Shown here: positions 7,802-44,507 of the stretch, in pieces | Layout: the number at the start of each line of letters is the position of its first letter | Position numbering within the stretch: the stretch's first letter is position 1 | Assembly: GCA_965285935.1 (NCBI GenBank) | Contig: OZ260664.1 | Coordinates: 18,228,001 to 18,292,000, forward strand | Origin: Ophelia neglecta | Lineage: Eukaryota | Direction: 5' to 3' | DNA length: 64,000 bases | Position numbers and translations under genes: made by a program | Notes under the pieces: generated by a model | The model's database searches: none | What the model was told of the DNA's origin: nothing | Seen by the model: only the letters and a program-made list of their open reading frames with translations

Positions 7802-8155
7802 ATGAACCAGTATGAAGGGGTCATGAGCAGCGACGGCCCGACGGTGACCGGGGAAGTTAGCACTTTTCTCGGTGATTCCTTCACCCAAACACATCTGAGA
7901 TCAAGTAATGTTGTTGCAGTGATCCAGTCGATTTCCACCCTTGTTGGACTGGTGTTCAATGTGGTCATCATTAGCACCTATCAACTGAGTCCGCGTCTGC
8001 GTACGCCACAGAACGTGTTTGTGGTGAATCTGGCCATCGCGGATTTTTTGGTTCTTCTAACATCCATCCCAGCCATCTACAGTATTCTGAGTGAAGAAGA
8101 CGGAAATGTCAATAGCGGTTATGGCTGCGACATATTCGCATGGTTCGTTGTTGAG
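7802..8155 (+). CDS. GPCR coding exon 1 (N-terminus, TM1, TM2, start of TM3)
   Basis: ATG at 7802; MNQYEG...NLAIADFLV...GCDIFAWFVVE; ends at the GC donor GAG|GCAAG, phase 0. Confidence 0.88.
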
Positions 8156-12804: not shown

Positions 12805-12930
12805 CTAGGCTGTTGACTCATTCCCAGCCGTAGGGGGCGATACATCCTTTCTACTTGAACTTTTATGTCGCCGACCTCTTGCTGACCTTGGAGTAGAATT
12901 CGTCTGGTCCGTATGTGTCAGTCGATTCAC
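12805..12930 (-). CDS. TRP paralog A exon 10 (C-terminal tail)
   Basis: ttcctccag|GTG AAT; VNRLTHTDQTNSTPRSARGRRHKSSSRKDVSPPTAGNESTA, TAG stop. Confidence 0.65.
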   Translation of the reverse strand: MNRLTHTDQTNSTPRSARGRRHKSSSRKDVSPPTAGNESTA

Positions 12931-15900
12931 CTGGAGGAATACAAGTAGATATTAAGTATAACCTACTTCAATTTCATCAACACAGCTTCCGCTGTTTTGT
13001 ACGTAATTTGATTCTCAGGCTTTTTGTCATAGCAACCTTTTCGGCTAGTTGTTCATGGGACTTAGTCAAAACATCCAGTTTATTCTCGAGTCGCTGTATA
13101 GCCCTTTCCTCTTCATTTGGCATTGATTGGTGAATCTGTTCCAGAGTCAGCGTGGATATACATCTATTATATTCGAGCATAAAAATCTGATTTGTAATTT
13201 GTCAGTTGTGTTATTAAAATGTTGAAAGAAATTATGTACTCCTTTTGTAGTATAGACATCTGTTCAAGGTGAAATATAGATAGCTATCGCCTATTTTAGA
13301 AGTTTTCTTCCAAAGGCGACCCACTAAAGTCAGGAGTCGGGTAGGTATCTCTTTTAGTACACTTACCTGTACAATTTCGTATCTTCTTGAAGATAACTTT
13401 TATCTGGTGATTTGATCTCGACTAATCGCAGACGCGCATCTAAAGCTTTAATGTATGAAAGAAATCGTCGGAGAAATGCCATTTTTCTCTCGATGCGGAC
13501 TGCCAATGTCACTGTTGATATCTGCCATGTTCGTGCTTCATTTTCCTAGTACATACCGACAACATTTCATTCATCAACTGCCCTGATCATAGTTTAACTG
13601 TACGCATTGTATAACATTGTTCAGACAAGAAATATGCTTGTAAACTACTGTTGACAATAATAATACTGGGAGTCCACAAAAAAGAACATAATTCGGCGCA
13701 TGCCTAGGTGTATTTTATACCTACTTAATCAAAGAATAAGTGTTACCTTACCTGAACACTGGCATATGTATCCGTCATCATTGCAATAAGTAGATTGAGA
13801 AAAACAATGGTGGCCAATATTATATAAATTAGGTACACTATCTTAGGGACCGTCGGGTCCAGTCCAGCAGCTGTGTAATTGGCGTAAAAGTCGTCTGTAA
13901 GAAAAAGTTCTCCCATTCCTAGCATCATGTTGAAGGTCATAAACAAAGTATCCCACACCGACCCTTTGTAACTTGGATCGGCGATAAAAAGTGCATGGAG
14001 GGCAAATCCAAATGCCAAGAGAATGAATAGATAGACAAAGGTGAATCTGGTCATATCACGCACGATTATGTACTTCAGCATCACGTTAAATGCGTGGACG
14101 GACTTGAAACCTTTGGTGAAACTAGTCGCGTATAGCCATCCTATTATTAAGGCGACAACAACAACGTAAACTTGATTACGATTGGACAGCAGGTTAAGCA
14201 CGTACCAAGTGGCAACAAATACACAAAATACTATCGCTGCTACGTGGGGAAGGTTGTCAAACGTCGTCAGCGCCAATTCGATTATCCATTTTGCGACTTT
14301 GTTCAGGCGAGAGAAAGGACCAATCATCTCCTCTGGAGACTTTCGGGTCACTTTGCGCCGTTTTCTCGATTGGCACCAGGCAGCTACATGGGCGATTGCG
14401 TAGTATATTTCGAACACAAGTAGACACCCAGGCCATATAAGAAAAGCCCAGTATTTCGTATTAGTTTCGGCTGCCGGCAAAACACGAAAGGAGAAGATGG
14501 TGAACAGGGCCATGTAGGTTACATGTATAAGCATCATAAAGCCGTAGATCCACTGGTACGCCGCCCAGTAGTTCTGTACCAATTGTTTGATAGGGGTAAT
14601 TTCTAAAATGTGAGCGGCTGTTAGGTTGTCCCCATTGGTGGCCAATATATCTAGACAACTGCCGATTCCTTCGGTGTCGGAATAAAAGTTGTCACTGAAA
14701 GATCTATCATTGGATCTCATCCGGGCAGGATCAGCCGACGGGGTCAAGTCTGTGACGTCATAATCATACAGAATTTCCCCATGGTTCGACTTATTCAAGG
14801 GAAAACAATAAACTTTCGGTGTGTTTAAGATTTTCTCAAGCATTCTAGCTGCTCCCAAAGCGGTTGCAAAGGCCACAACGGACATTCCCTCTTCATTGAG
14901 TGTGCACGCTGTCAACTCCAGAACAACGAATCTGTCAAATACAGCTTATCAATTATGCATGCGGGTCAATCGTTTTATCTAAAAACGTCACAAAATACGG
15001 AAATTTTCATTAAGGTTCAACACTAAACACTTGACTATTTGTTTTGCAGGTTTAAGAACGGTATAATAAACAGCGCATACATTAAACTACTACAGAAAAT
15101 ACTTGTTCACATATATAGTCAGTAACGGGAGGTGTTTTGTATAAAAGTGCAATTAGGAAAAGTTTATTGCACATGACACCAATGCTATAACAGAACAAAC
15201 ATTTAACACAATCGTTCAGGTTGTGGCACCTTTTGAAATGCCCATACGAAGAGCTGGATTGATCAGGAATCTCAATTTGTTTGGTTTTACACCACCAAGT
15301 GACTGACTCCTCCACGATCACATCATACACGTTGGCCATAAGTTCGGTTTTTCGTGGCTCAATGACCGTCTCAGCCACTAGCGAATGAAGAATCGTGTCC
15401 CCGTAGTAATTCTTGGCTAGTACATTAGCCCCTTCTTGCATTAGCATCCTAAGTGACAAAAAGTGAGCATTGAAAGTCCCTCTTATTCATAACCCTTTGT
15501 TAAATAAATAGATTGATTGAAACGATTTATCATGGCCTATCAATACTGGTATGTTCGCATAGGGATACAAACATATATATGTCATCCTAACCAAACAAAA
15601 ATAGTGTACGATACCTAACACTTCTAACGTCCCCAGTATTGGCACATATGTGTAAGACTGTCTCATGCTTGTGGTTTTCTTGGTCTATGTGGAAGTTATC
15701 ATGATCCCGAAATACTGCAAGCATCTCTTTGATAAACTCTGGATTATTCCGAATAGCAGCTTCATGGAGAGCTGTGTTGCCTATATTATAGAGACAGAGA
15801 CTGTGATTGATGTAATAACATGTTTCTTCAACACATTCACCAAAATAACTTTCTGTTTAATACTAGAAGAAAATCATCACTTGCCATTTTCGTCGATTAT

Positions 15901-18900
15901 GCTTGGGTCAAGGCATTCTAGTGGTTCCACTATTTTGACTTTTCCTTTTCTAGCCGCTAAATGAAGTGGCGTTTTGCCTAGGTTGTCTCTTTCGTCCAAA
16001 AGGGAGACGTTCCCACTTTCTTTGATAGCGTTCACCATATCTTCTGTAACCTTGAATGGCAGTTGCTTGACAGACGCTGTTATATGCAAAGGAGTTCGCC
16101 CATAGTGGTCCTAAAGTTTAATCAGGGCAGACATGTTTTACTAACCTTCGTAAAGAGTCAATGTTCCATTATATTTTCTATATAAAGCATAGTGTGAGTC
16201 AGTGACAGGTTACAGTCAATGTGTCTACCAATATTGGCTAAAGAGCAAAAAGGATAAGTTTACTATATTTTGTCGTTTAGAGAAAAACTAGTTTTCTTAC
16301 ATAACCTAAAATAATGGAAACTTACAATTATTTAAACGTGATTTATTATTAAAAGATTATTTGTATAATTGGTCCCATCATAAAAGTCATACCTAGTGTT
16401 TAAGTTGCAAATTATGCGTTCAATCAGTAATTGTACATATTGAATTCAAGACTATAAAGATGATTACTTATTAAATGACTTATGTAGTGAATAACCTACC
16501 TTCATTCCTAAGCTTGCTTTGTGCTCCATCAAGAAGTATATAGCATCTATCTGATTAAACCAGATCGCCGTGTGAAGAGCTGTGTCACCTTGGGAGTTCC
16601 TCTCATCTATATCTGCGACATCAATAAATGCCTCTAATACCTCTAAATTTCCCATGAGCGCCCCTAGATGAAGGTACGTGTTACCAGTTTCGTCCAGTTC
16701 CTCGGAATGACTTAGAATGAGGTGTCGATTGCTCAAAAGGACGCTTGTCACCTCAGGGGTAGAACGTACAGCCATAGAGAGAGCACTCTACAAATAAACA
16801 ACGGCGGATGCATACTATACAAGGGTAATGCTTCAATTTTAACAAAAAAGATTTTCAGCTGCGCTATTATTATAGACTGCAGTTTAACTAAGGTATATGA
16901 ATAATTGGTGAACTCACGCGCAGCGAGATCAGATTTAAAGTTAACTGGTCCACTTTTTCATTGTTAATAAGAATCTGTGCTGCTTCAGGTCGTTCGTGTT
17001 TGGCAGCCAGATGCAGCGGAGTATCGCCCTCGATGTTGTACTTATTAAGCATTTCGGGTGTGGCATCTGGCACGAACGTTTCTAGAATATTCAAGCAATT
17101 TCCTCGGACGGCCACGTGAAGGAAATTCTCACCACGTTCGTCGTATTCTGCTTGAGCTATCCCGAGTCCAATAAGTTCATGTATCAGATCCGGTTTGTCC
17201 TTTATCGCTGTTTCATTGAGCGGACGGATACAAACATCCAGCGCCTTTTGCCTGCGGCTCACCCCAGTTGTGCCCATATCGATCTGATCTCCTGCTACAT
17301 TTAAGGAAGCGTTCACATTTCCTTTGTTTATATCAAAGTTCAAACTACTTGTGTTGTTTAGATAGTACTTTGCTATGTAACTCTCTACCAATTCAGCTAT
17401 AATTTCTCTCCTTAACCGATCCTCATGAGCCAATGCAAATTGCCAGACTGATTGTTGTTGGTTGTTTCTCAGTGTGATGTCTGCACCGAGAAGTAGCAGT
17501 CGTTTCATCGCCTGTATATGGCCACTTTTTACAGCAAACATGAGCGCTGTGTGCCCAAATTTGTCAGTTAAATTGACATTCAGACAATCATATTGCCAAA
17601 TAACCCCTCTGGTAAGAGTTTCAATAATGTGAGTGTGTCCAAGGGCCGCAACAAAATGTAGAGCAGTCTCCTTTTTTCTATTTTGGGAATTTCTATCCAC
17701 GTTCTTGGCCAAGAATATATCCACTATTTCTTCATTACCGAGAGCGGCTGCTAGTATTAAAGGCAAGCCGAATCCTCTTGGTCTTTTCGGGGCCAGTTCT
17801 GCTCCTTTTCTTAGAAGAAATTTTACTAGGTCTGCCCTCTCGTACCTTACTGCCCAATACAAGGCAGTAGAGCCATTGGCAGTAACATAATTTACTTTGG
17901 CCTTAAGAAACACTATTTTCTCTGTGGTTTGTTGATGCCCACTGCGTATGGCATAAAAGAGAGGAGTCGCTCCTTGTGCATGGTTATTATCCAAGGTCGC
18001 ACCTTCTCTGATTAGCAACTCCACCATCTCCGTGTCTCCCCTAAAGGCTGCTATGTGAAGGGCGCTGAAATGGTGCAGTTTTCCATCAACTCCTTCCATT
18101 TTCCTAAGCGTGAATGCGTCCATGAATGCGAGGTTGCCGCGACGGAAAACTCCTGTTTTAGTCAAAGATAGTAGTCTGCAAACCATTGGCAGCCGCTCGG
18201 GGTCGCTAAGATCGGCGTTCTGTACGAGCGCGTGCAGAGCCGTCTGCTTGATGGCGCGGTTGTCTATATTTGTTTTATATGGCGTAATAACCATATCTCT
18301 GCTGCATTTATCATGTATCAAATACCAAATAACTTTCTTACTATACTCCTCCATTGCCACATGCAAGGCGTTTTTCTGGGAATTTGGCTCCTCCCATTCG
18401 TCGTTATTTAAATTGTGAATCGTACCAATTTTGGCAAAAATGGCACGACAGGTGTCAACATCATCACTTGCTGCTGCTTTGAACAATTGCTGTCGGCGTT
18501 TCTCCCCAGGGGGCTCCACGGTCACATGCACAGGAGATCGAACTTGAGCGGCTGGTTGCCCTCTCTTTGGGCTGTTTTGTTGGATAATGGCTTGGGCAGG
18601 GACCACCGATCTCCTTCTCAACCTTCGACCTAAGCCCTGCACACCTGCTTTCAAAGGCTGGTAAATTTCCTGATGTATAGGCTGCAATATTTCTCTATCA
18701 ACTCCACGCTGAATGCTTTTAGGAATCACTGCGTCAATTGCTCCTTGCAACACTGTCTGCTCCTACAGTTGAATAAAGAGAAAATTGCAGTTATGGTTCA
18801 TGTGTAATCAATACATCCCATGTGAGAAGCAAATGATAACATAAAGGATGGTGTATTTTTAATAATTCATAATACACTTTGCCACGGAAGGCCTGAGGAC

Positions 18901-19592
18901 ATAGGCAATTGTCTTGGACCATGGAACAGAAATTGAATATGTCCAATATCGATGGTAATACCAGAAGATTTCCTTAAAGTTATGTCGAATATGAGTTTCA
19001 TTCGTAACGCTTATTATGCACGTCCTGTTAAAAGCTTACGGAATATTGACTATTCCTTATATAAAAAGTCACATGCATAAAATCTGGATTAATGCTGGAA
19101 AGCTTGACACTGCTTCCTAAAAAATATACAAATTCAATCAAAGAAAATTTCGCAATTCATCCATGAATCCATGTATTTCATTGAAATGCAATGAATATTG
19201 GACAAGAATACACCGGGGTTCGGCAAAAAGGCAACATTGAACCTGGGAACTAAGACCACCAAAGGGACTGAAAATACTGGTCTGATTTCGGAGGTGGTCT
19301 GTTTAGACAGGTTATTTAATATTGAAAGTAAGCAAGTGGCAGGTGGTCTCATTATAGAGGTGGTCTTTAAGGCAGGTTTCGCTGTAGTAATAAAATTCCT
19401 TGCATGTATTTTGATAAATATAATATGTCCGTCTATTGCGTGTCCGGAGCTTGAATTGTTTACCTGTCTTGTTCTTTCTATCCCATCGGGAAGCTGGCCA
19501 GTGGACGGATTTTGTTTTTGAATCAGAGCCCTGTAATCATCGTCTAGGTCCGGATTTGCATTAGGATCCGAAGGTAAATTAAAAACATCCAT
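12805..19592 (-). CDS. TRP cation channel paralog A, TRPV-like pore with ~20-22 ankyrin repeats; complement(join(12805..12930,13037..13163,13367..13545,13752..14931,15230..15448,15615..15780,15885..16110,16500..16787,16918..18762,19464..19592)), ~1494 aa
   Basis: Ten exons splice in frame (4485 nt) with no internal stops. Many G-x-T-(P/A)-L-H repeats; 6-TM domain with TRPV-like GFKSVHAFNVMLKYIIVRDMTRFTFVY, pore FNMMLGMGEL, S6 LNLLIAMMTDTY, TRP helix TWQISTVTLAVRIER. Seven of ten exon lengths are identical to paralog B. The last exon is less certain. Confidence 0.9.
13037..13163 (-). CDS. TRP paralog A exon 9 (coiled coil)
   Basis: aatag|A TGT; CISTLTLEQ...AIQRLENKLDVLTKSHEQLAEK; weak donor AAG|gttgct at the same position as the paralog B donor; 127 nt. 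Confidence 0.8.
13367..13545 (-). CDS. TRP paralog A exon 8 (TRP helix)
   Basis: tactag|GAA AAT; ENEARTWQISTVTLAVRIERKMAF...KLYR; AG|gtaagt; 179 nt in both paralogs. Confidence 0.88.
13752..14931 (-). CDS. TRP paralog A exon 7 (last ankyrin repeat, linker, S1-S6, pore)
   Basis: ttgacag|A TTC; six hydrophobic helices, GMGEL filter, LNLLIAMM; CAG|gtaagg. Confidence 0.93.
15230..15448 (-). CDS. TRP paralog A exon 6
   Basis: cacttag|G ATG; EGANVLAKNYYGDTILHSLVAE...HFKR; AG|gtgcca; 219 nt. Confidence 0.88.
15615..15780 (-). CDS. TRP paralog A exon 5 (ankyrin repeats)
   Basis: atatag|GC AAC; GNTALHEAAIRN...HETVLHICANTGDVRSVR; AG|gtatcg; 166 nt. Confidence 0.88.
15885..16110 (-). CDS. TRP paralog A exon 4 (ankyrin repeats)
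   Basis: ctttag|GAC CAC; GRTPLH, GKTPLHLAA; ends at GC donor AATG|gcaagt; 226 nt. Confidence 0.88.
16500..16787 (-). CDS. TRP paralog A exon 3 (ankyrin repeats)
   Basis: tttgtag|AGT GCT; GNTYLHLGA, GDTALHTAI; AAG|gtaggt; 288 nt in both paralogs. Confidence 0.9.
16918..18762 (-). CDS. TRP paralog A exon 2 (~13 ankyrin repeats)
   Basis: ctgtag|GAG CAG; 615 open codons with ankyrin motifs; CGC|gtgagt. Confidence 0.92.
19244..19386. mobile_element. Truncated Tc1/mariner-type MITE end in intron 1 of TRP paralog A
   Basis: Repeated GGTGGTCT subterminal motifs ending ...GGCAGGTTTCGCTG-TA; the reverse complement is TA|CAGCGAAACCTGCCTTAAAGACCACCTC. A related end, TATAGTGAAACTTGTGGTAAAGACCACCTC, lies at 42694-42723. 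Confidence 0.55.
19464..19592 (-). CDS. TRP paralog A coding exon 1
   Basis: aacATGG start; MDVFNLPSDPNANPDLDDDYRALIQK...RTRQ; CAG|gtaaac; 129 nt as in paralog B. Confidence 0.85.
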
Positions 19593-22361
19593 GTTACCGA
19601 ACCAGTGGCAGAGAAAGTAAGGAAGAGTTAGCTACGAGGATGTGCGTAACTGGCTTTTATGCCTGTCCAATGAATTGACATCTTGACAATGTTTTTACAT
19701 TCCACGTAGGACAGTTCTCTCTTATAAACTTCGGTGTAACATTACATGGAGACCTTAGTGAAGAGACCTTGGCAGCTGAAATGACAAGAAAAAGGGATGT
19801 ATGAATATTTATTATTCAACAAACTATATTATGTATAAGACACGTGGTCACTCAGCTTTGAGAATGTGTATCATTCAAAATATGATAATAGCCAACTTAT
19901 TGCGGTTGTATAAGCTCTACTGTTCTGTACCAATGCTCACCCGCTCTCCACACGCACTACTTTCAGGGCACGATATTTGATAAAAGGGTGATCAGGTTTT
20001 ACCAATATTTAATCCTAAGGTATTGGGTGGCAGCGTTATCGATTAGTCCATGTTGCCGGTAGCGATGATAACGGCAGCCATGACATAGTAAGAGGATAGC
20101 ATAGAGGAACACCCAATTGTATAACCGAGGGCGGGGGGGGGGGGGGCTAGAAGAATATGGGGGCGGCGATATTAGGACTGAAAAAAATGCTAATTTCCGG
20201 CGAAGGAATTTGTTTTTTTTAGCCACATTTTACAAAATTTGAAGAACAAAAATGTCTTTGGACTAATCCCCCCTTCACCAACCACCCAAACCCCAAGCGT
20301 GTCCGCATACCCTTTACATGTGAATCGCTTAAGGTGCATGAAGTTTGCCGTCTGAGCATGTGCTGTCATGTTAACAAGCTTCATAAGACCATTATGAATG
20401 TCAAAAAAATAGTATCTTGGAAAAATGATACCACCAGCCCCAAAGCTTGGTCCAGCAGCTACATGTGCAGTTGTCGGTGCTAAACATGTTTAATGTTACT
20501 GTCATGGTGTAGGGGCAGGCTAGTCCAGCTTAAGACATTATTTATAGCCATGTCTAGTGCAGGTAATGTTGACCAATGCTCTATGTACTATATATTTTTT
20601 ATCAATATCGTGGAAAAACAGCATAAACTTACCATATATAATATCGCTGCTATATTTTCTGCATGTCAAACCGTTCCGTAATCCACTATGACCTAGCATA
20701 TCAACAAGCACAGACGACCCGTCGCTAAGCAAGTGTGACGTGTCCACACACGTTACGGATCAATACACAAACACCTTTGGCAGCCTTCACTAATATTACT
20801 GCATATAGACATGGCCCTCGTGTGTTAGCGGCTGCTTTATTGCACATACATCCGAGTAAAAGCTATATAAGAGTGTTAACGAGCCATATCACATCAAATT
20901 TTGTAATAACTAACACTATAACGCTATGTATCGGTGTAAACGTGTACACTCTCCCCAGAAAAGGTAACCCCTTTGACCATTGATCCCAGGGACAGGACAT
21001 TGTCAATTGTAGTCATGAAAGTAACTTGGGATATTTTTTCCGATGATACCCGGATGTTGGTATTAACATCCGGGTATCTGCGTCTTTTGTGTAGTGCCTT
21101 TGTTTTATGGATGGGTAATTTATATGGTTTAAGGTGGACTAGGTACTTATGTGAGTGAATTTGTGTACATGAAGAATAAGGCTTTTGTTTATAAAAAATA
21201 TACAAGTTATTGAAATGACGTAAGTTTATTTAAACCATGATTAATACAGTTAGCACAAATATGCCCCCCCCCCCTTCCGGGTAGATTTACACCCTTTACC
21301 GGACAATACATCGGAGGACAGCATGTGTGGTCTCAAAAAACACATGCATATTTATATGCATATGATTAAAGTTATTTTACAAAGCCCTGCGTCTTTATTG
21401 GTTTAACGGGTCATTGTGCGATATGCTGGTGAAAAGGTAAGGAGGGAAAAATTATCGAATAGACAAGTAGGGCAACTACTTTGATTTGCCTATAACACCT
21501 CCCAGCACGCTCCAACAAAGTATAGCCCACTTTATTTGACGTATGGGATATAAATGGATAAGCTAATAACAGGAATTAATTTCTTTTATAATTCAAAAGT
21601 AGTATATATAACACAGTGGTTAGGAGTTCATCGATGTTTTCTTAAAATAAGACATGTGCACACCATCCTCGAGTGAAAGTTTATATGCCTAAAACTCTCA
21701 TTTGTATACAACAAAAATGGTATTAACATAATAATTACATTTTTTTATTTTTGAAGGCATACCGTTTTGTCAGGCGTAACCACGCATATCGCCTCAGAGC
21801 TATTACTCAAGCCAAGAAAAGCTTGGCAATGGCGACTACGAGGAGCAGACGGGGACCGTTTTCGCTAAAATTCTCCGCTCGAGTGCAATTTTTGAGGCGA
21901 TCTGCGTGGGTTTCGCATGGCAAACTGATACAATAAATATATTATAAAAGGTGTTGTCCTAGTTTGAAGTATGTGCAATTAATATTCTTGTACATCATTT
22001 ATACATAGCGCATATACTCGAGAATTTTTAGGAGCTAAACAACAGTGATTTCATGTGATAAAAACTCGGGCAAGCAGTTTTATTAACCGCTGATGTCCTA
22101 ATGCATAAGTACCTACCTACCGTGTTATTTTATTCCCAAAATTAGGCAAAATTTAATGAACTATAATTTTCCAGGCAATGCCATCATATTGACACTACGT
22201 GATTCGGCCAAGGGACAAGTTATTCAAAATCTATGTGTGTTCAATTATTTACCATGTTGTGCCTCTTTTCATATCTTATATACTCTGAATTAGGAATATC
22301 ACGGATTTCAACATCTATGCTATGTCAGTCCAACTGCAACGACCCATTTTTAGATTTTTCA

Positions 22362-22466
22362 TCACTCTGCTCCCGCTCCATGTCTGTATTTTGATTTAAT
22401 GCCCTTGCTTGTCGCTGGGGAAATAGCCTTTCCTTTTCCATCTCCAACTGTTCTGAATGTTTGTAT
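22362..22466 (-). CDS. TRP paralog B candidate last exon
   Basis: ttctatttag|ATA CAA; phase 0 reads IQTFRTVGDGKGKAISPATSKGIKSKYRHGAGAE*. A second frame is open to 22325. Confidence 0.5.
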   Translation of the reverse strand: MQTFRTVGDGKGKAISPATSKGIKSKYRHGAGAE

Positions 22467-25400
22467 CTAAATAGAAATATTACATATAGAATTCAGTTGC
22501 CAATATAAATGTTAAAAATACCTCAATACCGTGCTGCAAGCCTGAATATTAAATATACACCATCCTCGACCAGGAAGGAAAACAAAAGCCAATTTAGGCC
22601 ATGGGAATATGAACATAAGACAAGGACGTGAGTTTGGAACAAGTGGCCAATCATAGCAAAGATGAATGAGTGGAAATGTCTCAAGTCGGGTATACAAATA
22701 CCCAACAACTATAGGAAGTAGGTAATTCCCACGGAACGCAGTTAAGCCCTTGCTATTACTTTATATGTTTAATGATTTGTAACCCAATGTGGTCTTTTAG
22801 GCTCACCTGTTCAGTCAGTTGCTGGTAGCATTCGGTTAAGACTTCCAGTTGTTTTTCAATGTTTTTTTTAGTCCACGTTTTATCGTGCGGGAACAACTGG
22901 TGACTCTGGTCCAATGTTAAGGTAGTCATACAACTACAAAAGCAAATACACAGGTTTGATATTTGTTTAACAATGAAGCAAAGAAGAAGGAAAAAGGAAT
23001 CATCCCAATTATTATCTAACTGTTATCATTAAAAGTTCTGAATATCGCAATAATTAAGGGTTGAATATTTTATATCTCATTTGGTTTAATGCAATGTGAA
23101 ATGCCCTTTTTTGTGTGTTACAAATATCCTTCATCGGGACTGTTACAAGAGAAAATACACAATTAAAAAATGATGAATTGGTGAATTTTACTGAGATAAT
23201 ACCTACCGATACAATTTGTGCTTGGGCTGCAAGTAGCGTCTCTCTGGGGACTCAAGCTCAACCAATCGTAGACCGTCGTCTGAGCCTCTGATATTGGACC
23301 AAACACGTTTAATGAACGCCATCCTGCGCTCTATGTGAACTGCCATAGTCACGGTTGATATCTGCCAGGTATGTGCTTCATTGTTCTATTAATTCACAAA
23401 GCAAGTTTGTATCATTTACATTGACATAATATGTTTGTTATGTTCATAAAAAGATCCAACTGTTATAAAATAAGGCATAGTTTACCACATATTTGAATCT
23501 TATTATCGAACATTTGAAAAAAAACAATAACACAAACTTGATACATTTTAATACTTAACAAAAAATGCTTCAGTTCTATACATTTTTACTTGCCAAACCT
23601 GGGTTCAAACCAGTATAAACACACCTGTACATGAGAGTATGTGTCCGTCATCATAGCGATCAGTAGATTGAGGAAAACAATGGTGGTTAATATTATATAA
23701 ATCAGGTACACTATCTTAGGGACGGTCGGATTGAGTCCTGCTGCCCTGTAACTGATTTCGAACTCCTCGGTGAGAAAGAGGTCTCCCATTCCAAGCATCA
23801 TATTGAACGTCATGAATAATGTGTCCCAAACGGGGGTCGTGTAATTAGGGTCAGAGATTAAGAGTGCGTGAAGGGCAAAACCAAACGCCAGAAGAATAAA
23901 AATGTAGACAAACATAAATCGGGTCATATTACACACGAATATGTACTTTAGTATCTCGTTGAATGCATAGACAGATTTAAAGCCTCTTAGAAAGCTGGTT
24001 GCATAGAGCCATCCTATGATGAGGATGACAACTACCAGGTAAACTTGATTTGTATTTGACATGAGATGCAGAACGTACCACGTGATAACAAAGGTACAAA
24101 ACAATAGCGCCGCTAGGTGGTGAAGATGATCGGCAAACGACAATGCTATGTCTGAGACTGAGCGTTTACTGTTCAGGTAAGGTACATTCCATTCTTTGGC
24201 AGACTTCTGCATTACTCGTTGGAACGTTCTAGATTGTGACCCCGTTATAATGATAACAATAAGGTAGTATATTTCGAACATGAGCAGGCAACCAGGCCAT
24301 AGAAGAAAACCCAAGTACTCAATATTGGTTTCCCTCTTTGACACATGCCTTATGGAGTAAGGTAGTACGCGGAATGAGTAAGCTGTAAAAAGGCTCATGT
24401 GAATAACATGCACTATCATCATAATGCCGTAAGTCCACTGATATGCCGACCAGTAACCCTTGACCAACTGTTTTATAGGGGTGATCTCTAGAATCTGAGC
24501 TGCGGTAAGGTCATTCCCACTGGTTGACAGTATATCCAAACAGCTGCTCATTTTAGTCCCAGATACAAAGTTTTCCGCGAAAGATACAACATTGCATCTG
24601 ATTTTTTCGGGATCAGCTGCCGGAATTAGATAGGTGACATCATAGTCGTAGATGATTTCTCCATAAGTTCCCTTGTTCTGAGCAAAGCGATACACTTTAG
24701 GCGTGTTCAGGATTTTTTCCAGCATCTGGGATGCCCCGAGTGCAGTTGCCATGCCCACTACAGTGAATCCCTTATCGTTATTGGTGCAGGCCGTTAACTC
24801 AAGCACGGCGTACCTGTCAATGGAAAACAAAATTAGCTACACTACAGTTTGCAATAGTTTATAACTAGCAATGAAGGAAAGTTTGAGATACTACTGTCCT
24901 TTTCACACAACGTGTTACGAACGGTGTTCTTATCATGTCGATGATAAGTGTATGGATACGCAGATGCTTTTCCTAGGTCCCACCTTTTCAGTTGCCCATG
25001 CGCAAAGCTTGTCTGGTTTGGAATCTCCGCATGCTTTGTTTTACACCACCAGACAACAGATTCTTCCACAATGACATCGTACACTTTTAGCATGAGATCC
25101 GTCTTGTGAGGTTCAATGACTGTCTCAGCCACCACTGAGTGAAGAACAGTGTCGCCTTGGCTGTTTTTGGCTAACAGATTAGCACCTTTTCTCATCAGAA
25201 GTCTGGCAACCCAAAAAAAACCACACATTTATCAATTCAAAAACTTTTACCGGTTGAACTAGAACTGTACAGAAAGCGGTATACCTTTTCTTATGCATGT
25301 GGATCAAAATAAGAATATTCTATACAAACTTGGAGACTTGCGGCCTTTGCAAGAGCCTGCGCTTTTCTGTCTGATTTTAACAACATACCTGTAGCCCTGG

Positions 25401-28400
25401 TGCCTAAATTACTGACCCAGGGTAATAAACTCTGATTATAGCGAAGACATGTTGTAAAATATACGGATGAATATTCCGCCAAATAATTTTACACAAAAAT
25501 GGGAGTGGATACCAGGCAGACAAAGCCAAATTATTGATTAAGAAAGGTCCATTAAAACGGTACACATCAGGAACCAGCAGTCACAAGCCACTTGCAAAAA
25601 TAAATAGATCTACAACCCCCAAACAGTAAACAAATATATATCAAAATGAAACAATCGAAAACAACATTTAAATATAACTAGCAATAAGAAGTAGTCAACT
25701 GTTTTCCGTGAGGCGAGGTGTAACATAAAACGCGAATCCATTATAACACATGCTTCGAGGATTGTTGAATCCTATAAAAGACTCACACAGGCTTAGGGAT
25801 GGTCAATACAGTCGATGACTCCCTTTCGGACTTTTCCTTTGTAGTATAAGTTCTAGTTGCCATTAGTTTTAACAACTACGCGGTATCAGGTTGTCATCTT
25901 TAACCTGATCTATTCCGCCCATCCAAAGCCTAAAGGCCATGTGAATCTGCTTCATACTGATATAGTATCGTAAATTACAGATGAACGTGATCAGTCATAA
26001 TAAAAGCGTGACTGGTTCACTTTACACGGTTAACATTTTTTATTGCACCATCGAGGAGATCTGATACCAGCTTTGCCTCATATAACTGTACGAACCTTTC
26101 ACGGCCCTCTTTTTCTTGTGTTTATTGAGACAATTTCATCTTCAGTGTCAAAAATTCTGAGGGTGTTTAGACCACAATATGCCCTCCTACGACATATTAC
26201 ATCGATGTTCTATATTTACTACTGTGGTTTTGGTAATGTGACTCGGAGTTTGGGAAACTTTTGGCTTTTCCTGGTTTTAAGTGTATATTCATTTCTGGTG
26301 CCCATTTTTTTAATGTGCATTATAAGTTAATTTGCTGGGGCTTGGGTTGATGTCTGTGATCCTGTGTTCGGTGGATCCTAGTTTTTCGGACCATTTTTTT
26401 TCCGTTGTGTATCCACTCCCGATTTTTACATTGGTTCATTACTGTTTTATAATTTGAACTTGCTTATCTTCAATTTTTTACCTACAGTTTACATATACAA
26501 TAGATATCATTGTTCTAGCGATCAGGACCGCAAGTACCTGACACTCTCCACACTGCCGTTCTTAGCACATATATGCAGGACTGTTTCCTTTTCATAGTTT
26601 TGTTGGTCGATTTGAAAATTGCAATGGTCTCCAAAAACAGCAATCATTTCTTTTATGAACAATGATTTGTTTCGTATTGCAGCTTCGTGCAAGGCACTGT
26701 TACCTATTACAATACATAAAGAATAAATGCACACAAATAGCAATAATTTGTGTTAAACACTAATGCTTCGTTACTTTCAGAGTGTTCCATTAGGATTTAA
26801 GAACGGCTGACTGTGTGTTATATATATATAGCTGGAAATTGATACATTTTGCTGATGCTTTAGTTACTTGCCATTTCCATCCACAGCCCCAGAATCCAGA
26901 CTCACCAACGGCTTTACACTATCTAATTTGCCCTTTTTAGCCGCCAGGTGGAGTGGTGTTTTGCCGTCGTTATCTGCTTCGTCAAGTAGGTAGAGGTTTC
27001 CGCTTTCCTTTATGGCATTTACTATATCTATGGTGACCTTGGCTGAAATCTGCATGACTGAAGCCGCAACATGTAAAGGCGTCCGTCCATAGTTGTCCTA
27101 AACAAAGTTGTGTAAGACGAACAAAACGGATTGGTATAAATCTGCTGGATGCGTAAGGGGCTCATTTTTATTTCTGATAGTTACATTTGCCAAAGACGTC
27201 AGTGACAAATACTAGGATAACAAGCATTGTTAACACTTTGTTTTTTATTCAAAGATACGTTTACGAAAGGCAAACATAGAATATGTATATATTCACAACT
27301 GTTTCATTTATTCATTGGTAAACTTGTTACAGGAATACCTCTGTGGGTCACCGACAATTCCAACAAGGCTACTTATGACATTTAGGAGAATAAGTGACTA
27401 ACCGCTATTCCCAGACTGGCCTTGTTTTCCATAAGGAAGTATATAGCGTCCTTCTGATTTGACCTGATGGCCACGTGAAGCGCTGTATCACCTTGGATGT
27501 TCCTTTCATCAACATCAGTGTGGTTAATGAATGCCCTTAATACGTCCATGTTCCCCTCAAGCGCACCAATATGGAGGAATGTGTTACCATCATCATCTAC
27601 CTCATCAGCTTGTGACTGGACAGCGGGGAAATTGCCAAGCAGGATGGTTGTCATATCCGGACTTGTGCGCACGGCTAGGTACAGCGGACTCTGTTACAAC
27701 ATATCAGATTTAAACACTCGAACAGAAATAGTTTTGCCCCAATTAAAGTTTGCTACGAATTCATAGCCTAGAGGTGAACAACTAGTAAGAGTAAAAAAAT
27801 AATTGCTTTACAATGACAATTTTTTTGTTGATTACTAAAATTCTGATAGACCAAATGAAGATAAATTGTAAATGTCCAAAAGAATGCCCAGGGTCGGTAA
27901 ATCACTGTTCTCATTGATACTGACAGTACAACTGGTCAAATTTAGGTTAACCGTACAATGGGAAAATCACTGCCCTGTTTATATGGAAAAGACATACCAA
28001 CTTTTTTCATATTTATCAACAAATGGCCTATATTAACTTACCTGCAGGGTGTCTATTTTCGTCGCCAGTTGATTTGTTGCGGCGTTTTTAATCAATATTT
28101 TTGCCGCCTCACATCTATCATGCTTTGCAGCAAGATGCAACGGCGTGTCACCCTCAACATTTTGTTTATTCAGCATAGTGTGAGTAGCGCCTGTAACAAA
28201 CGTTTCTAGAATTTTTAAGCTATTACTCCTAACAGCTACGTGAAAAAAGTTTTCGCCGCGGGAATCGCACTCTTCTTTGTTAATTCCCAATTGGATAAGT
28301 TCGCTGATTAATTCTGGATTATCCAAAGTTGCTGCCTCGTTAAGTGGCGAAACTGCTGCCTTTAGTGTATTTGCTACCACATTTAAACAATTGGTATACA

Positions 28401-30496
28401 CAGCAATCGCTTGTTCTACTACATTTTCGGCAGCATGCGAGTCGGTATTGCCCTGGCTGATTCTGACTTTGTATTTCTCAACTAATACTGATAAAGTTTC
28501 CCTCCTGAACTCCGCATTATTAGTCAGCGCAAGTTGCCATGCTGATTGTTGATTGTAGTTTCTCGATGATATGTCCGCCCCTAAATCAATGAGTAGTTTC
28601 AAAGCATTTACGTGGTTGCCTTTGACCGCATACATAAGTGCCGTGTGTCCGGATTTGTCCATCGCGTTGACATCTAGGTTTTTCGATGGCTGCCCAGCCG
28701 CCAGGATTTCGATAATATTCACGCGGCCTAACGCCGCCGCGAAATGCAAAGCGGTCCGTTGTTTGGTATTCTGTGAATTTTTATCTACGTTCTTACGCAA
28801 GAATATATCGACTATATCTTGATTACCAAGAGCGGCGGCGAGTATCAGGGGCAAGCCAAAACCCCGCGACCTGAGAGGTGCTATGTCCGTGCCTCGCTTT
28901 GACAGCAAGAAACGGACGATGTCTGCTCTCTCGTATCGGACCGCCCAGTATAGAGGGGTGGAGCCGTTTGAAGTTACATAATTCACATTGGCCTTCAGGT
29001 CTACTAATTTCTTCGTTGTCTCCATATAGCCGCTTCTTATGGCATAGAACAGGGGTGTCGCCCCATTGGCGTGGCTGTTATCTATGGTTGCCCCCTGTGA
29101 TATTAGGGACTCCACCATATCTGTGTCTCCTCTGAAAGCAGCCATGTGAAGTGCGCTTAAATGGTGTAGCTTTCCATTCAACCCATCGGTTTTGCGGACA
29201 GTGATTTTGTCTATAAAGCCCGTGTTTACCCTCCAGAAGTGCCTTTGTTTGGTAAATGTAAGAATGCGCTTCAATAGGTTCAGTCGCTGGGGGTCGCCGA
29301 TTTCGGCGTTCTGGACGAGTGCATGTAGTGATGTCTGTTTGGCCTGGCGGTTTTCTATGAAAATGTCATATGGGGCAACCACCAATTCTTTGCTACATAT
29401 GTCTAATAAGTACTGAATTACGTTCTTACTGTAACACTCTAAAGCAATATGCAGTACATTTTTCGCGGTATTTTTCTCTGTCCATTCTGTGTTGCTCAAA
29501 TTATGAATCGGGTTGATTTCCTCACAGATTGTCTTACAGGTGGCGACATCATCGTACTCAGCTGAATTGAACAACTGTAGCCGTCTTTGCTCCCCTGATT
29601 GCGTCGAAGTTAAACCTGGGGCTATTAAGGGCACATCTCGCTGTTTCCGCGGACTGCTCGTCTGATGGATCACGGCCTGAGAAGGTTCCCATGCTTTTTT
29701 CACCTTTAGACCCAAATGCCGCACGCCTGATTTGTTTGATTGGCAATATTTTGGTATGGCTTGACGTTGTTTAACATTATTGCTAGTAGTGTTCCTTGTT
29801 CGTTTGTTACTGTTTGTTGAAACTGTTGGCTCATTGGCAGGAGTAACTTCCTGCAAAAGAATAACATGATTACCAAAAAACTATGATTTTTCTTGTTGTA
29901 AAAATTTCACTTATCGGGGATATAGTGTTATTTGATCAAAATTTGCAGGAGCTAGTTGTTCTACAAGGTCCAATTGCAATTTAAGTTATTAAAGCACTGG
30001 TATAAATGACCCTGTACACGAACAAAGACTTCTTAATAATGTATGTGCATATATTCAGACTGTATGGTAGTTTGTGTGATGGATGGCACTTTACGTGCGT
30101 TCAAACTGATTTTACCGCGTTAAAGTAGGTTAAATTCCCTTATTTTGCGAATGTTTTCGCTTTGCAGCCACTTCAAAATTAAAAGCCACGTTGTATTAAA
30201 ATATTAAATACACTCACGTTTGAAATTATCATTATTAAGAAAGAACTAGATAATCTTAACAGGGCTTGCTCGTTTCTTTCATTATCAACAACATGTCTGG
30301 TAAGTTACGTCGAATAACTGTATAATGAAAACTGTCTCTGGTTTCACAAACATTTTATAAATATTACCTGTTTTTCTTCCTCATCCAGTGATTCCGACAC
30401 ATTACAGTCCGTATTAAGCTTTACAATCAACGCTCTAAAATCATCGTCCAAGTCGGGATTTGCATTAGGATCAGCCGGTAGATTGAATACATCCAT
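22362..30496 (-). CDS. TRP cation channel paralog B, TRPV-like pore with ~20-22 ankyrin repeats; complement(join(22362..22466,22807..22933,23207..23385,23625..24813,24984..25202,26538..26703,26872..27097,27403..27690,28042..29850,30368..30496)), ~1478 aa
   Basis: Same exon order and phases as paralog A, open throughout (4437 nt). In-frame TAA 9 nt upstream of the ATG. Pore FNMMLGMGDL, S6 LNLLIAMMTDTY, TRP helix TWQISTVTMAVHIER. The frame of the last exon is uncertain. Confidence 0.9.
22807..22933 (-). CDS. TRP paralog B exon 9 (coiled coil)
   Basis: tttgtag|T TGT; CMTTLTLDQ...NIEKQLEVLTECYQQLTEQ; CAG|gtgagc; 127 nt. Confidence 0.85.
23207..23385 (-). CDS. TRP paralog B exon 8 (TRP helix)
   Basis: aatag|AAC AAT; NNEAHTWQISTVTMAVHIERRMAF...KLYR; CG|gtaggt; 179 nt. 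Confidence 0.88.
23625..24813 (-). CDS. TRP paralog B exon 7 (S1-S6, pore)
   Basis: ttgacag|G TAC; 6 TM helices, GMGDL filter; CAG|gtgtgt. Confidence 0.93.
24984..25202 (-). CDS. TRP paralog B exon 6
   Basis: gccag|A CTT; KGANLLAKNSQGDTVLHSVVAE; AG|gtggga; 219 nt. Confidence 0.88.
25495..26427. mobile_element. ~0.93-kb non-autonomous TIR element in intron 5 of TRP paralog B
   Basis: Left AAAAATGGGAGTGGATAC and right GTATCCACTCCCGATTTTT are inverted repeats. The intron is 1335 bp versus 166 bp in paralog A. The same terminus recurs at ~1455-1483 and, inverted, at ~59101-59148. Confidence 0.6.
26538..26703 (-). CDS. TRP paralog B exon 5
   Basis: aatag|GT AAC; GNSALHEAAIRN...KETVLHICAKNG; AG|gtactt; 166 nt. 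Confidence 0.88.
26872..27097 (-). CDS. TRP paralog B exon 4
   Basis: tttag|GAC AAC; GRTPLHVAA, GKTPLHLAA; GC donor AATG|gcaagt; 226 nt. Confidence 0.88.
27403..27690 (-). CDS. TRP paralog B exon 3
   Basis: taacag|AGT CCG; GNTFLHIGA, GDTALHVAI; GCG|gttagt; 288 nt. Confidence 0.9.
28042..29850 (-). CDS. TRP paralog B exon 2 (~13 ankyrin repeats)
   Basis: ttttgcag|GAA GTT; 603 open codons; CAG|gtaagt. Confidence 0.92.
30368..30496 (-). CDS. TRP paralog B coding exon 1
   Basis: MDVFNLPADPNANPDLDDDFRALIVKLNT...EEKQ; CAG|gtaata. Missed by the ORF track. Confidence 0.85.
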
Positions 30497-44428: not shown

Positions 44429-44507
44429 GTCTATGATGTTTTGTGCTGTCTATGATGTTTTGTGCTGTCTATGATGTTTTGTGTTGTCAATGATGTTTTT
44501 GTGCTGT
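44429..44507. repeat. 19-bp minisatellite (GTCTATGATGTTTTGTGCT) x4
   Basis: Four adjacent units read directly; the last two carry substitutions or an indel. Confidence 0.92.

What the first reader, a model, noticed from the sequence alone, without database searches (positions are those of the whole stretch)
12805..30496. Tandem pair of giant-ankyrin TRPV-type channels: TRPV pore on a TRPA/TRPN-like scaffold
Seen: two intact ~1480-1490 aa paralogs with ~20-22 ankyrin repeats (hand count), a 6-TM domain, a TRP helix and a C-terminal heptad repeat. Known: the S4-S5 linker (GFKS..F..MLKYI...DMTRF.FVY), GMG[D/E] filter, LNLLIAMM.DTY and W....V.....IER helix are TRPV-type. Canonical TRPVs have only 6 ankyrin repeats and ~700-950 aa; long arrays are typical of TRPA1 (~16-17) and TRPN/NOMPC (29). 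Inference: an uncharacterised TRPV-related subfamily, perhaps allied to the little-studied TRPVL group. The long array could act as a tethered mechanical spring or a thermal/chemical sensor, and the two paralogs might form heteromers as Nanchung/Inactive do. This is the best candidate for a novel system in the window.
Basis: partly seen in the sequence, partly recalled or inferred. Interest (0 to 1): 0.8.

Follow-up and report, generated by a model that had tools for sequence, protein, structure and literature searches.

The report
Tandem long-ankyrin TRPV-like channel genes
Two neighbouring, intact genes in this probably annelid genome encode 1,460-1,472-residue ion channels with a TRPV-type core behind about 21 ankyrin repeats and a C-terminal heptad helix; they belong to a large mollusc-annelid clade that databases mislabel as TRPA1 or ankyrin and that the two TRP surveys whose gene tables I could read do not list.

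Summary
Both genes lie on the minus strand and have 9 coding exons, not 10. A runs 30496-22756 (1,460 aa) and B 19592-12977 (1,472 aa). Intron phases are identical and there are no internal stops. They share 60% amino-acid identity, with pN 0.245 against saturated pS.

One transcription unit is supported three ways: intronless paralogs in the same genome encode ankyrin array plus channel in single ORFs; another species has all nine exons in the same order; full-length homologues are colinear. No RNA data exist.

The channel half is TRPV-like in sequence. All 60 listed PDB hits are TRPV (E 4e-19). The filter is GMGE/GMGD, S6 is LNLLIAMM, and the TRP-helix Trp sits at N+21. The added ankyrin repeats resemble generic ankyrin arrays, not TRPA or TRPN specifically.

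The genes fall in a 100/100-supported clade of roughly 1,130-1,620-aa mollusc and annelid proteins, separate from the clade holding fish TRPV4/6. This clade never has the S4-S5 glycine. TRPVL and TRPA1 fingerprint residues do not match.

I could not put TRPA, TRPN, Nan/Iav or TRPVL sequences in the tree. Function is untested. I read it as a new variant of a known kind.

The parts
22756..30496 (-). Gene A, whole coding span: 9 exons, 1,460 aa
   Evidence: Splice model with conserved sites and phases and no internal stop.
12977..19592 (-). Gene B, whole coding span: 9 exons, 1,472 aa
   Evidence: Splice model. All nine exons are colinear with the ortholog locus L037.
30368..30496 (-). A exon 1 (43 aa, start ATG at 30496)
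   Evidence: 60% identical to B exon 1 and conserved in L037.
28042..29850 (-). A exon 2 (603 aa): disordered N-terminus plus the main ankyrin array
   Evidence: Pfam Ank_2 E 4e-56. 10 ANK HMM hits.
27403..27690 (-). A exon 3 (96 aa, ankyrin repeats)
   Evidence: Pfam Ank. Phase 0/0, same as in B.
26872..27097 (-). A exon 4 (ankyrin repeats); GC donor GCAAGT
26538..26703 (-). A exon 5 (ankyrin repeats)
24984..25202 (-). A exon 6 (TRPV ARD-like repeat, GDTVLHS at 25136-25156)
   Evidence: Colinear with homologues.
23625..24813 (-). A exon 7: last ankyrin repeat, linker, pre-S1, S1-S6. GMGD at 23781-23792; LNLLIAMM at 23649-23672
   Evidence: PDB best hits are TRPV1/5/6, E 7.5e-14. Motif coordinates.
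23207..23385 (-). A exon 8: TRP helix (TWQIS at 23356-23370) and post-TRP segment
22756..22933 (-). A exon 9: beta3-like strand, heptad helix (22804-22869), stop codon
19464..19592 (-). B exon 1 (43 aa, start ATG at 19592)
16918..18762 (-). B exon 2 (615 aa): disordered 1-82, about 13 ankyrin-type helix pairs, disordered loop 473-510
   Evidence: Pfam Ank_2 E 1e-51. AlphaFold2 pLDDT 78.7. PDB best hits are ankyrin-1/2, DARPins and the NOMPC ankyrin array.
16500..16787 (-). B exon 3 (96 aa, ankyrin repeats)
15885..16110 (-). B exon 4 (ankyrin repeats); GC donor GCAAGT
15615..15780 (-). B exon 5 (ankyrin repeats)
15230..15448 (-). B exon 6 (TRPV ARD-like repeat, GDTILHS at 15382-15402)
13752..14931 (-). 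B exon 7: last ankyrin repeat, linker beta-hairpin, pre-S1 (NYWAAYQW at 14550-14573), S1-S6. S4-S5 GFKSV at 14097-14111; GMGE at 13908-13919; LNLLIAMM at 13776-13799
   Evidence: PDB best hit TRPV6, E 4.2e-19, and all 60 listed hits are TRPV. AlphaFold2 pLDDT 86.8. VIA-align Z 17.0 to TRPV2.
13367..13545 (-). B exon 8: TRP helix (TWQIS at 13516-13530; the Trp is 21 residues after the S6 Asn)
12977..13163 (-). B exon 9: beta3-like strand (YR|CISTLTLEQ), heptad helix (13034-13105), stop codon

Best explanation
What it is. A and B are an old tandem duplicate of one gene. Both are kept by purifying selection. They belong to a lophotrochozoan clade of TRPV-related channels that I call long-ANK TRPV-like.

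Build of each subunit:
- a disordered N-terminus;
- about 21-22 ankyrin repeats, of which the last few correspond to the canonical TRPV ankyrin domain;
- the TRPV linker with its beta-hairpin, then pre-S1;
- S1-S6 with a TRPV1-4-type GMG(E/D) filter and an LNLLIAMM gate;
- a TRP helix with the conserved Trp;
- a beta3-like strand;
- a C-terminal heptad helix of about 4 heptads.

How it most likely works (inferred from what is established for TRPV1-4, TRPA1 and NOMPC). Four subunits form a non-selective, Ca2+-permeable cation channel. The long ankyrin arms and a central C-terminal coiled coil build a large cytoplasmic assembly, similar in plan to TRPA1. That assembly receives the stimulus or binds partners and passes it to the gate through the linker and TRP helix.

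The stimulus is unknown. My odds: polymodal chemical or thermal sensing about 0.35; mechanical tethering through the array about 0.25; other about 0.4.

Shown: gene structure, domain order, sequence kinship, clade membership, selective constraint. Inferred: tetramer, ion permeation, coiled coil, sensory role.
For: Gene models:
- Intact, with matching splice sites and phases in both copies.
- Overall pN 0.245 against pS 0.76, which is saturated; 59.8% amino-acid identity.

One protein, not two:
- Same-genome paralogs carry the ankyrin array and Ion_trans in one ORF: L022 (1,213 aa), L024 (1,385 aa) and L025/L026 (1,377 aa).
- L022 is 47.5% identical to P0007 over 1,237 aligned positions.
- The ortholog locus L037 from another assembly has all nine exons colinear.
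- Homologues of 1,212-1,270 aa align colinearly from exon 2 through exon 7.

TRPV core:
- phmmer against the PDB gives TRPV6 4.2e-19, TRPV5 8.9e-19 and TRPV1 1.2e-16. All 60 listed hits are TRPV.
- L022 residues 728-1086 match TRPV6 residues 261-609.
- The family HMM aligns to fish TRPV4 and TRPV6 over model positions 5-384 of 387.
- Fingerprint residues W426, Y666, N676, L678, I679, A680 and W697 are all present.

Clade:
- 665 library hits, 65 of them at E<=1e-30, many of 1,200-1,460 aa.
- The long-ANK clade has 100/100 support and the annelid subclade holding A and B has 98/93.
- The split from canonical TRPV plus group 1 has 94/100 support.

Heptad helix: conserved across the family.
Against: - No transcript evidence. 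No RNA run is on record for this organism.
- No TRPA, TRPN, Nan/Iav, OSM-9 or Nematostella TRPVL sequence could be obtained. Placement relative to those families rests on similarity ranking and fingerprint residues, not on a tree.
- Structure comparison does not separate TRPV (Z 16.9-17.0) from TRPA1 (Z 16.0-16.1). Only sequence identity does: 22-25% against 16-17%.
- Two near-universal TRP residues are replaced in the clade. G563 is His in B and Tyr in A, and is Gly in 0 of 31 clade members. Y441 is His. Coupling between the S4-S5 linker and the TRP helix may therefore differ from known TRPVs.
- The Ion_trans scores of exon 7 are just under Pfam's cut-off.
Confidence: 0.75

Rival explanations
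1. The genes are TRPA-family channels, as RefSeq's names for the mollusc relatives imply. The TRPV-like look of the pore would then be shared ancestry within the TRPV/TRPVL/TRPA group.
For: - Relatives are named 'TRPA1' or 'TRPA1-like' in Biomphalaria, Littorina, Haliotis asinina, Patella and Ruditapes.
- The long ankyrin array and C-terminal heptad helix are TRPA1-like features.
- VIA-align Z for TRPA1 (16.0-16.1) is within 1 unit of TRPV (16.9-17.0).
- No TRPA sequence was in my trees.
Against: - None of the 60 best PDB sequence hits of exon 7 is TRPA1. The worst listed E-value is 6e-12.
- TRPA1 matches L022 and B exon 2 only in the ankyrin region.
- At the two positions that mark TRPA1, G958 and R975, these proteins have Ala and Trp.
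- The region before S1 aligns to TRPV6 residues 261-351.
- Identity to TRPA1 is 16-17%, against 22-25% for TRPV.
Confidence: 0.08
2. The genes belong to TRPVL, the vanilloid-like family reported from cnidarians and annelids.
For: - TRPVL is described as sister to TRPV and present in the annelid Capitella.
- The long-ANK clade lies outside the clade that holds vertebrate TRPV4/6.
- No TRPVL sequence was available for a direct test.
Against: - The published TRPVL fingerprint is N at position 441, G at 563, W at 666, F at 678 and A at 697. These proteins have H, H/Y, Y, L and W there.
- Named Capitella proteins in my searches fall in another group, group 1, not in the long-ANK clade.
Confidence: 0.06
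3. The model is an artefact. An ankyrin-only gene (exons 1-6) lies next to a short TRPV-like gene (exons 7-9), or one or both copies are untranscribed relics.
For: No RNA evidence. The exon joins are inferred.
Against: - The same domain order occurs in single uninterrupted ORFs in this genome.
- All nine exons are colinear in another species.
- Splice phases fit in both copies.
- Exon 6 and the start of exon 7 together form the TRPV-type last repeats, so a split there would cut a fold.
- pN is far below pS in every exon.
Confidence: 0.04

Closest known systems
Vertebrate TRPV1-6 (solved structures; fish TRPV4 and TRPV6 in my trees)
   Same: - Best sequence matches of the channel half.
- Same order of last ankyrin repeats, linker beta-hairpin, pre-S1, S1-S6 and TRP helix.
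- GMG(E/D) filter as in TRPV1, TRPV2 and TRPV4, by my knowledge of those sequences.
- S6 LNLLIAMM as in TRPV5/6 (alignment).
- TRP-helix Trp present.
   Different: - About 21-22 ankyrin repeats instead of 6, and 1,460-1,472 aa instead of about 700-870.
- A C-terminal heptad helix that the fish TRPV6 control lacks.
- The S4-S5 glycine (rTRPV1 G563) is His or Tyr, and Y441 is His.
- A separate clade in the tree.
TRPA1
   Same: - Long N-terminal ankyrin array and C-terminal heptad/coiled-coil element.
- Similar overall fold score (Z 16.0-16.1).
- Relatives carry TRPA1 names in RefSeq.
   Different: - Transmembrane sequence identity is only 16-17%.
- The TRPA1 marker residues G958 and R975 are not shared.
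- Sequence hits to TRPA1 are confined to the ankyrin repeats.
NOMPC / TRPN
   Same: A long ankyrin array ahead of a TRP channel. The NOMPC ankyrin region is among the best hits of exon 2 (E 1.5e-48).
   Different: - About 21-22 repeats, interrupted by a roughly 40-residue disordered loop, against 29 in NOMPC.
- The channel half is a weaker structural match (Z 12.5).
- No NOMPC transmembrane hit appears among the best PDB sequence hits.
Lophotrochozoan TRPVC/D (Morini et al. 2022, PMC9664204), also called gamma-TRPV (PMC13402157)
   Same: Non-vertebrate TRPV-type channels from molluscs and annelids that are closer to vertebrate TRPVs than Nan/Iav are.
   Different: - The listed gamma-TRPV members are 803-899 aa, against roughly 1,130-1,620 aa here.
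- The Haliotis rufescens and Crassostrea virginica long-ANK genes (LOC124135909, LOC111102144, LOC111107780) are absent from that paper's TRPA and TRPV tables.
- Direct sequence comparison was not possible.
TRPVL
   Same: A TRPV-related family outside canonical TRPV, reported from annelids.
   Different: The fingerprint differs at five positions. No TRPVL sequence was available for a tree.

Membership tests
TRPV (vanilloid) family, broad sense | The transmembrane core is most similar in sequence to TRPV channels | tested here: met
   phmmer against the PDB: TRPV6 4.2e-19, TRPV5 8.9e-19, TRPV1 1.2e-16. All 60 listed hits are TRPV. L022 residues 728-1086 match TRPV6 residues 261-609.
TRPV (vanilloid) family, broad sense | Colinear ARD end, linker beta-hairpin, pre-S1, S1-S6 and TRP helix | tested here: met
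   The family HMM aligns to fish TRPV4 and TRPV6 over model positions 5-384 of 387. The AlphaFold2 model shows ankyrin helices, two strands, linker helices and six TM helices with a pore helix.
TRPV (vanilloid) family, broad sense | Group-1 TRP/TRPV fingerprint residues (rTRPV1 W426, F434, Y441, G563, F591, Y666, N676, L678, I679, A680, W697) | tested here: inconclusive
   Present: W426, F591, Y666, N676, L678, I679, A680 and W697 (at N+21). Position 434 is Tyr, a conservative change. Y441 is His. G563 is His in B and Tyr in A, and is never Gly in 31 clade members.
TRPV (vanilloid) family, broad sense | Six-repeat ankyrin domain and a total length of about 700-950 aa | tested here: not met
   About 21-22 repeats and 1,460-1,472 aa.
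TRPV (vanilloid) family, broad sense | Falls inside TRPV in a tree that also holds TRPA, TRPN, TRPVL and Nan/Iav | not testable with these tools
   No such sequences could be fetched. With fish TRPV4/6, Lingula and same-genome TRPV-like genes, the clade (100/100) is separate from the canonical clade.
TRPA | S6 N-L-I-G and an Arg in place of the TRP-helix Trp (hTRPA1 G958, R975) | tested here: not met
   These proteins have Ala and Trp at those positions.
TRPA | Long ankyrin array (14-17 repeats) and a C-terminal coiled coil | tested here: met
   About 21-22 repeats. The heptad pattern is conserved in the family by a home-made score. Coiled-coil formation itself was not tested.
TRPVL | Published fingerprint W - N G Phi F W N F I A A | tested here: not met
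   The proteins differ at positions 441 (H), 563 (H/Y), 666 (Y), 678 (L) and 697 (W).
TRPN (NOMPC) | 29 ankyrin repeats and a NOMPC-type transmembrane domain | tested here: not met
   About 21-22 repeats with a disordered break. NOMPC scores Z 12.5 against 17.0 for TRPV2. NOMPC sequence hits lie only in the ankyrin repeats.
gamma-TRPV / lophotrochozoan TRPVC/D | Membership of the published clade (Pecten XP_033732844 and XP_033761183, Haliotis XP_046376203, Magallana XP_011427399) | tested here: inconclusive
   Those proteins are 803-899 aa. The long-ANK loci of the same species are not in the published tables. The sequences themselves could not be compared.

The most novel reading that the evidence does not exclude
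The long-ANK clade is a so far unnamed subfamily, or a family-level sister, of TRPV that is restricted to lophotrochozoans. On a TRPV core it independently built a TRPA1-like cytoplasmic assembly: 16-22 ankyrin repeats around a C-terminal coiled coil. It also replaced the near-universal S4-S5 glycine that couples to the TRP helix. It would serve as a sensory (noxious chemical or thermal, or mechanical) channel in molluscs and annelids. TRP surveys would have missed it because automatic annotation calls it TRPA1-like, ankyrin-like or uncharacterised.
Probability: 0.3. Interest if true: 0.7.

Novelty: new variant of a known kind. Interest (0 to 1): 0.55.

Why it matters
TRP channels are grouped into families partly by their cytoplasmic domains: six ankyrin repeats mark TRPV, 14-17 mark TRPA and 29 mark TRPN. 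Here a whole clade in two large phyla joins a TRPV-type core to a TRPA-like cytoplasmic plan.

If confirmed, three things follow:
- It is a natural experiment on how ankyrin arrays and coiled coils couple to a TRPV gate.
- It is a case where the almost invariant S4-S5 glycine is dispensable. From my own knowledge, mutation of this position in TRPV1 and TRPV3 gives over-active channels.
- Many RefSeq 'TRPA1-like' and 'ankyrin-3-like' entries in molluscs would need correcting, and with them the counts in published mollusc TRP surveys.

The practical value is limited until one member is expressed and recorded.

Tried and rejected
- Exon 10. No conserved coding block lies downstream of exon 9 in either copy, and both frames end in stops. 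Rejected.
- RNA support. No RNA run is on record. The three runs that hold the sequence contain 70-78% of the sampled words of a stretch that is about half intron, so they are DNA.
- Reference sequences. The word-based protein search yielded fish TRPV6, one TRPV4 and Lingula 'TRPV5'. It gave no TRPA1, NOMPC, Nan/Iav, OSM-9 or TRPVL.
- PF23317 search of the own genome found nothing anywhere, controls included.
- Outgroup exons from the own genome.
- Salpingoeca PTSG_07515 as root. The match is partial, on a very long branch and of odd composition, so its placement is unreliable.
- A cluster of intronless 610-635-aa ORFs with S6 motif NFLIA served as a working root. It does not match the TRPVL fingerprint, so I do not call it TRPVL.
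- Structure search. It does not separate TRPV from TRPA1.
- The Protein Atlas feature search gave only sub-0.9 leads across TRPC, TRPV and TRPA.
- Complex prediction for a four-copy exon-9 helix was not available.
- Spliced model. I sent no joined coding sequence to any search or fold tool; exons went in singly by reference. Frame continuity and lengths were checked in a local script.
Full report
**1. What is in the sequence**

The region holds two paralogous genes on the minus strand. The large open frames translate to ankyrin-repeat arrays and to a six-helix channel domain. Pfam finds Ank families in exons 2 and 3, with E-values down to 4e-56. It finds Ion_trans in exon 7 at 24.4 and 20.4 bits, just under the 25-bit cut-off.

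tblastx of copy A against copy B gives nine colinear conserved blocks. I placed splice sites where both copies share an AG acceptor and a GT donor in the same phase. One intron has a shared GCAAGT donor. This gives nine coding exons in each gene, no internal stop, and identical phases:

| Gene | Span | Length |
|---|---|---|
| A | 30496-22756 | 1,460 aa |
| B | 19592-12977 | 1,472 aa |

Both exon-9 frames end in stop codons, and nothing downstream is conserved between the copies.

The copies are 59.8% identical in protein. Non-synonymous difference is 0.245 per site, and synonymous sites are saturated at 0.76. Both copies have therefore been under purifying selection since an old duplication.

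I sent no joined coding sequence to any search or fold tool. Exons were used singly by reference, and frames were checked in a local script.

**2. Is it one protein?**

No RNA run is on record for this organism, so the evidence is comparative. It comes from three independent sources.

- *Intronless paralogs.* The same genome (window = G000 C7:18228001-18292000) has paralogs in which the ankyrin array and the channel lie in one open frame. These are L022 (1,213 aa), L024 (1,385 aa) and L025/L026 (1,377 aa). Pfam finds Ank plus Ion_trans in each.
- *Ortholog in another species.* A contig from another assembly (L037, ENA ERZ25069296) carries all nine exons in the same order and orientation within 6 kb. 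Exons 3-8 align end to end.
- *Full-length homologues.* Database proteins of 1,212-1,270 aa align colinearly from exon 2 to exon 7. L022 is 47.5% identical to P0007 over 1,237 aligned positions.

**3. Anatomy**

*Ankyrin array.* A local ANK profile recovers 6 of 6 repeats in fish TRPV6. It gives about 19-21 hits in each window gene, some weak or split across exon junctions. AlphaFold2 of B exon 2 (pLDDT 78.7) shows:
- a disordered first 82 residues;
- about 13 ankyrin-type helix pairs;
- a long helix followed by a disordered loop at 473-510.

*Channel half.* AlphaFold2 of B exon 7 (pLDDT 86.8) shows the last ankyrin helices, a two-strand hairpin, linker helices, pre-S1, S1-S6 and a pore helix.

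*After S6.* The TRP-helix Trp sits exactly 21 residues after the S6 Asn, across the exon 7/8 junction. A strand-like motif follows, (L)YRCISTLTLEQ. It lines up with family motifs such as NRFMMTLSLDEV and with the fish TRPV4/TRPV6 motifs RRWCFRVDE and DRWFLRVED.

*C-terminal helix.* The last roughly 35 residues form an amphipathic helix with heptad spacing. My simple a/d-contrast score gives these values:

| Sequence | Contrast | Shuffles reaching it |
|---|---|---|
| Gene B | 0.70 | 4 of 300 |
| Gene A | 0.57 | 10 of 300 |
| L022, P0002, P0007, P0061 | 0.78-0.90 | 0 of 300 |
| P0285 | 0.70 | 1 of 300 |
| L024 | 0.53 | 23 of 300 |
| Fish TRPV6 tail (control) | 0.33 | 280 of 300 |

**4. Which TRP family?**

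*Sequence similarity points to TRPV.* For B exon 7, all 60 listed PDB hits are TRPV channels: TRPV6 4.2e-19, TRPV5 8.9e-19, TRPV1 1.2e-16. The region before S1 also aligns to TRPV6. Copy A gives the same picture. In the intronless paralog L022, TRPA1, NOMPC and ankyrin match only the repeat region, while residues 728-1086 match TRPV6 residues 261-609. A family profile aligns to fish TRPV4 and TRPV6 over nearly its whole length.

*Fingerprint residues.* I mapped the published twelve-residue TRP fingerprint (PMC9242649 Table 1) with an L-INS-i alignment.
- Present: W426, F591, Y666, N676, L678, I679, A680 and W697.
- This excludes the TRPA1 markers (Gly at 680, Arg at 697).
- It disagrees with the TRPVL pattern at five positions: 441, 563, 666, 678 and 697.
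- Two departures are clade-wide. Position 441 is His in all 31 clade members. The S4-S5 glycine, G563, is never Gly: it is His in 23 and Asn in 6, with His in B and Tyr in A.

*Structure comparison is less decisive*:

| Match | Z | Sequence identity |
|---|---|---|
| TRPV2 | 17.0 | 22% |
| TRPV6 | 16.9 | 24% |
| TRPA1 | 16.0-16.1 | 16-17% |
| TRPV1 | 15.9 | 25% |
| Nan-Iav | 15.3 | 19% |
| NOMPC | 12.5 | 18% |

*The ankyrin extension is generic.* The best hits of exon 2 are ankyrin-1/2 (1.3e-63), DARPins and the NOMPC repeats. TRPA1 scores only 1.8e-27. This probably explains the database names of the relatives.

**5. The clade**

An exhaustive search with B exon 7 found 665 cluster representatives. 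Of these, 65 score E<=1e-30, and many are 1,200-1,460 aa with about 700 residues ahead of the linker.

Named members are molluscs and annelids:
- Molluscs: Lymnaea, Biomphalaria, Haliotis, Patella, Pomacea, Crassostrea, Mytilus, Mizuhopecten, Dreissena, Mya, Ruditapes and Solemya.
- Annelid: Dimorphilus.

Their RefSeq or UniProt names are 'TRPA1' or 'TRPA1-like', 'ankyrin-3-like', 'Ankyrin-1', 'SECG-like' or 'uncharacterized'.

*First tree* (IQ-TREE, LG+C20 PMSF, 77 rows). A split with 94/100 support separates the long-ANK sequences from two other groups. One is a canonical group: fish TRPV4/6, Lingula and same-genome canonical-length genes. The other is 'group 1': Capitella, Paralvinella and Lineus 'TRPV5-like'.

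*Second tree* (LG+G4, 63 rows), rooted on a distant same-genome TRP cluster:
- long-ANK clade, 100/100;
- mollusc subclade, 100/99;
- annelid subclade holding A and B, 98/93;
- group 1 as sister, 87/91.

A and B are sisters (100/99). They group with the longest members, including P0013 (1,458 aa) and L024/L025.

The root is provisional.

**6. Literature**

- TRPVL is described as a sister family of TRPV in cnidarians and annelids.
- Morini et al. 2022 name a lophotrochozoan TRPVC/D group.
- A 2026 cephalopod study renames that group gamma-TRPV. It lists its members at 803-899 aa.
- The same study's TRPA and TRPV tables do not contain the long-ANK loci of Haliotis rufescens or Crassostrea virginica (LOC124135909, LOC111102144, LOC111107780).
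- A 2026 abalone survey reports two 'unclassified' TRPs near TRPV and TRPVL, and one 'TRPVL-like' gene. Its tables are not held, so I cannot say whether these are long-ANK members.
- I found no paper that describes a TRPV-cored channel with about 20 ankyrin repeats and a C-terminal heptad helix. Peng et al. 2015 and Himmel & Cox 2020 could not be read here.

**7. Mechanism and verdict**

Shown: two intact, constrained genes; their domain order; TRPV-type sequence kinship of the core; membership of a well-supported mollusc-annelid clade.

Inferred from established knowledge of TRPV1-4, TRPA1 and NOMPC:
- a tetrameric, non-selective, Ca2+-permeable cation channel, from the GMG(E/D) filter and the LNLLIAMM gate;
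- a cytoplasmic assembly of ankyrin arms around a C-terminal coiled coil, acting as the sensor or tether module;
- coupling to the gate through the linker and TRP helix, possibly altered by the missing S4-S5 glycine.

The stimulus is unknown. A/B heteromers are possible but untested. The heptad exon is the most diverged part, at 31% identity.

The finding is real. It is a new variant of a known kind, not a new kind of channel.

Noticed in passing
G000 C2:110.25-111.84 Mb (loci L038-L040, L046) and single genes L041, L043, L044: At least 20 intronless ORFs of about 610-637 aa form a tandem TRP-like cluster. Their S6 reads LLLNFLIAIM and there is no Trp in the TRP-helix region. They are only weakly similar to TRPV6 (E 8e-12), and Pfam gives weak PKD_channel or Ion_trans hits. 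This looks like a lineage-specific expansion of a very divergent TRPV-related group. It does not match the published TRPVL fingerprint.
   Followed up: partly
L022:3919-7557, L024:3957-8111, L025:3980-8110, L026:4034-8164 (own genome): The other long-ANK paralogs of this genome are single uninterrupted ORFs, while the window pair has eight introns. The cause could be retroposition or intron loss, and the direction is undetermined. L025 and L026 are 97% identical and lie 22 kb apart.
   Followed up: partly
window 14097-14111 and 23970-23984 (S4-S5 linker): The S4-S5 linker glycine is 98% conserved across TRP channels (rTRPV1 G563). In the long-ANK clade it is His, Asn or Tyr in all 31 members. 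The S1 position Y441 is an invariant His in the long-ANK clade and group 1, and in 8 of the 14 rows of the canonical group. From my own knowledge, changes at this glycine make TRPV1 and TRPV3 over-active.
   Followed up: partly
window 7787-8170 and 10342-10701, + strand: Two ORF pieces match the start and end of the rhodopsin-family 7TM profile (7tm_1, E 2.6e-9 and 2.7e-4). A GPCR gene with introns lies upstream of the channel pair.
   Followed up: no
Database relatives (P0272, P0278, P0281, P0282, P0285, P0038, P0297, P0310, P0058): RefSeq and UniProt name the mollusc members 'TRPA1(-like)', 'ankyrin-3-like' or 'Ankyrin-1'. This is probably because whole-length BLAST is dominated by the ankyrin repeats. 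The channel half is TRPV-like.
   Followed up: partly
G000 C1:99.59-99.61 Mb (L027, L028) and relatives P0139, P0163, P0165: A second annelid/nemertean TRPV-like group ('group 1') reaches 970-1,140 aa, with 550-700 residues ahead of the linker. Only 2-3 ankyrin repeats are recognisable there, so the N-terminal region is largely unassigned.
   Followed up: no
L037:12422-15337: ORFs with a weak reverse-transcriptase (RVT_1) hit lie just downstream of the ortholog in the other species. Only one channel copy is visible on that 21-kb contig.
   Followed up: no
window 44429-44507: A 19-bp tandem repeat with 4.1 copies, the only array above score 80 in the window.
   Followed up: no
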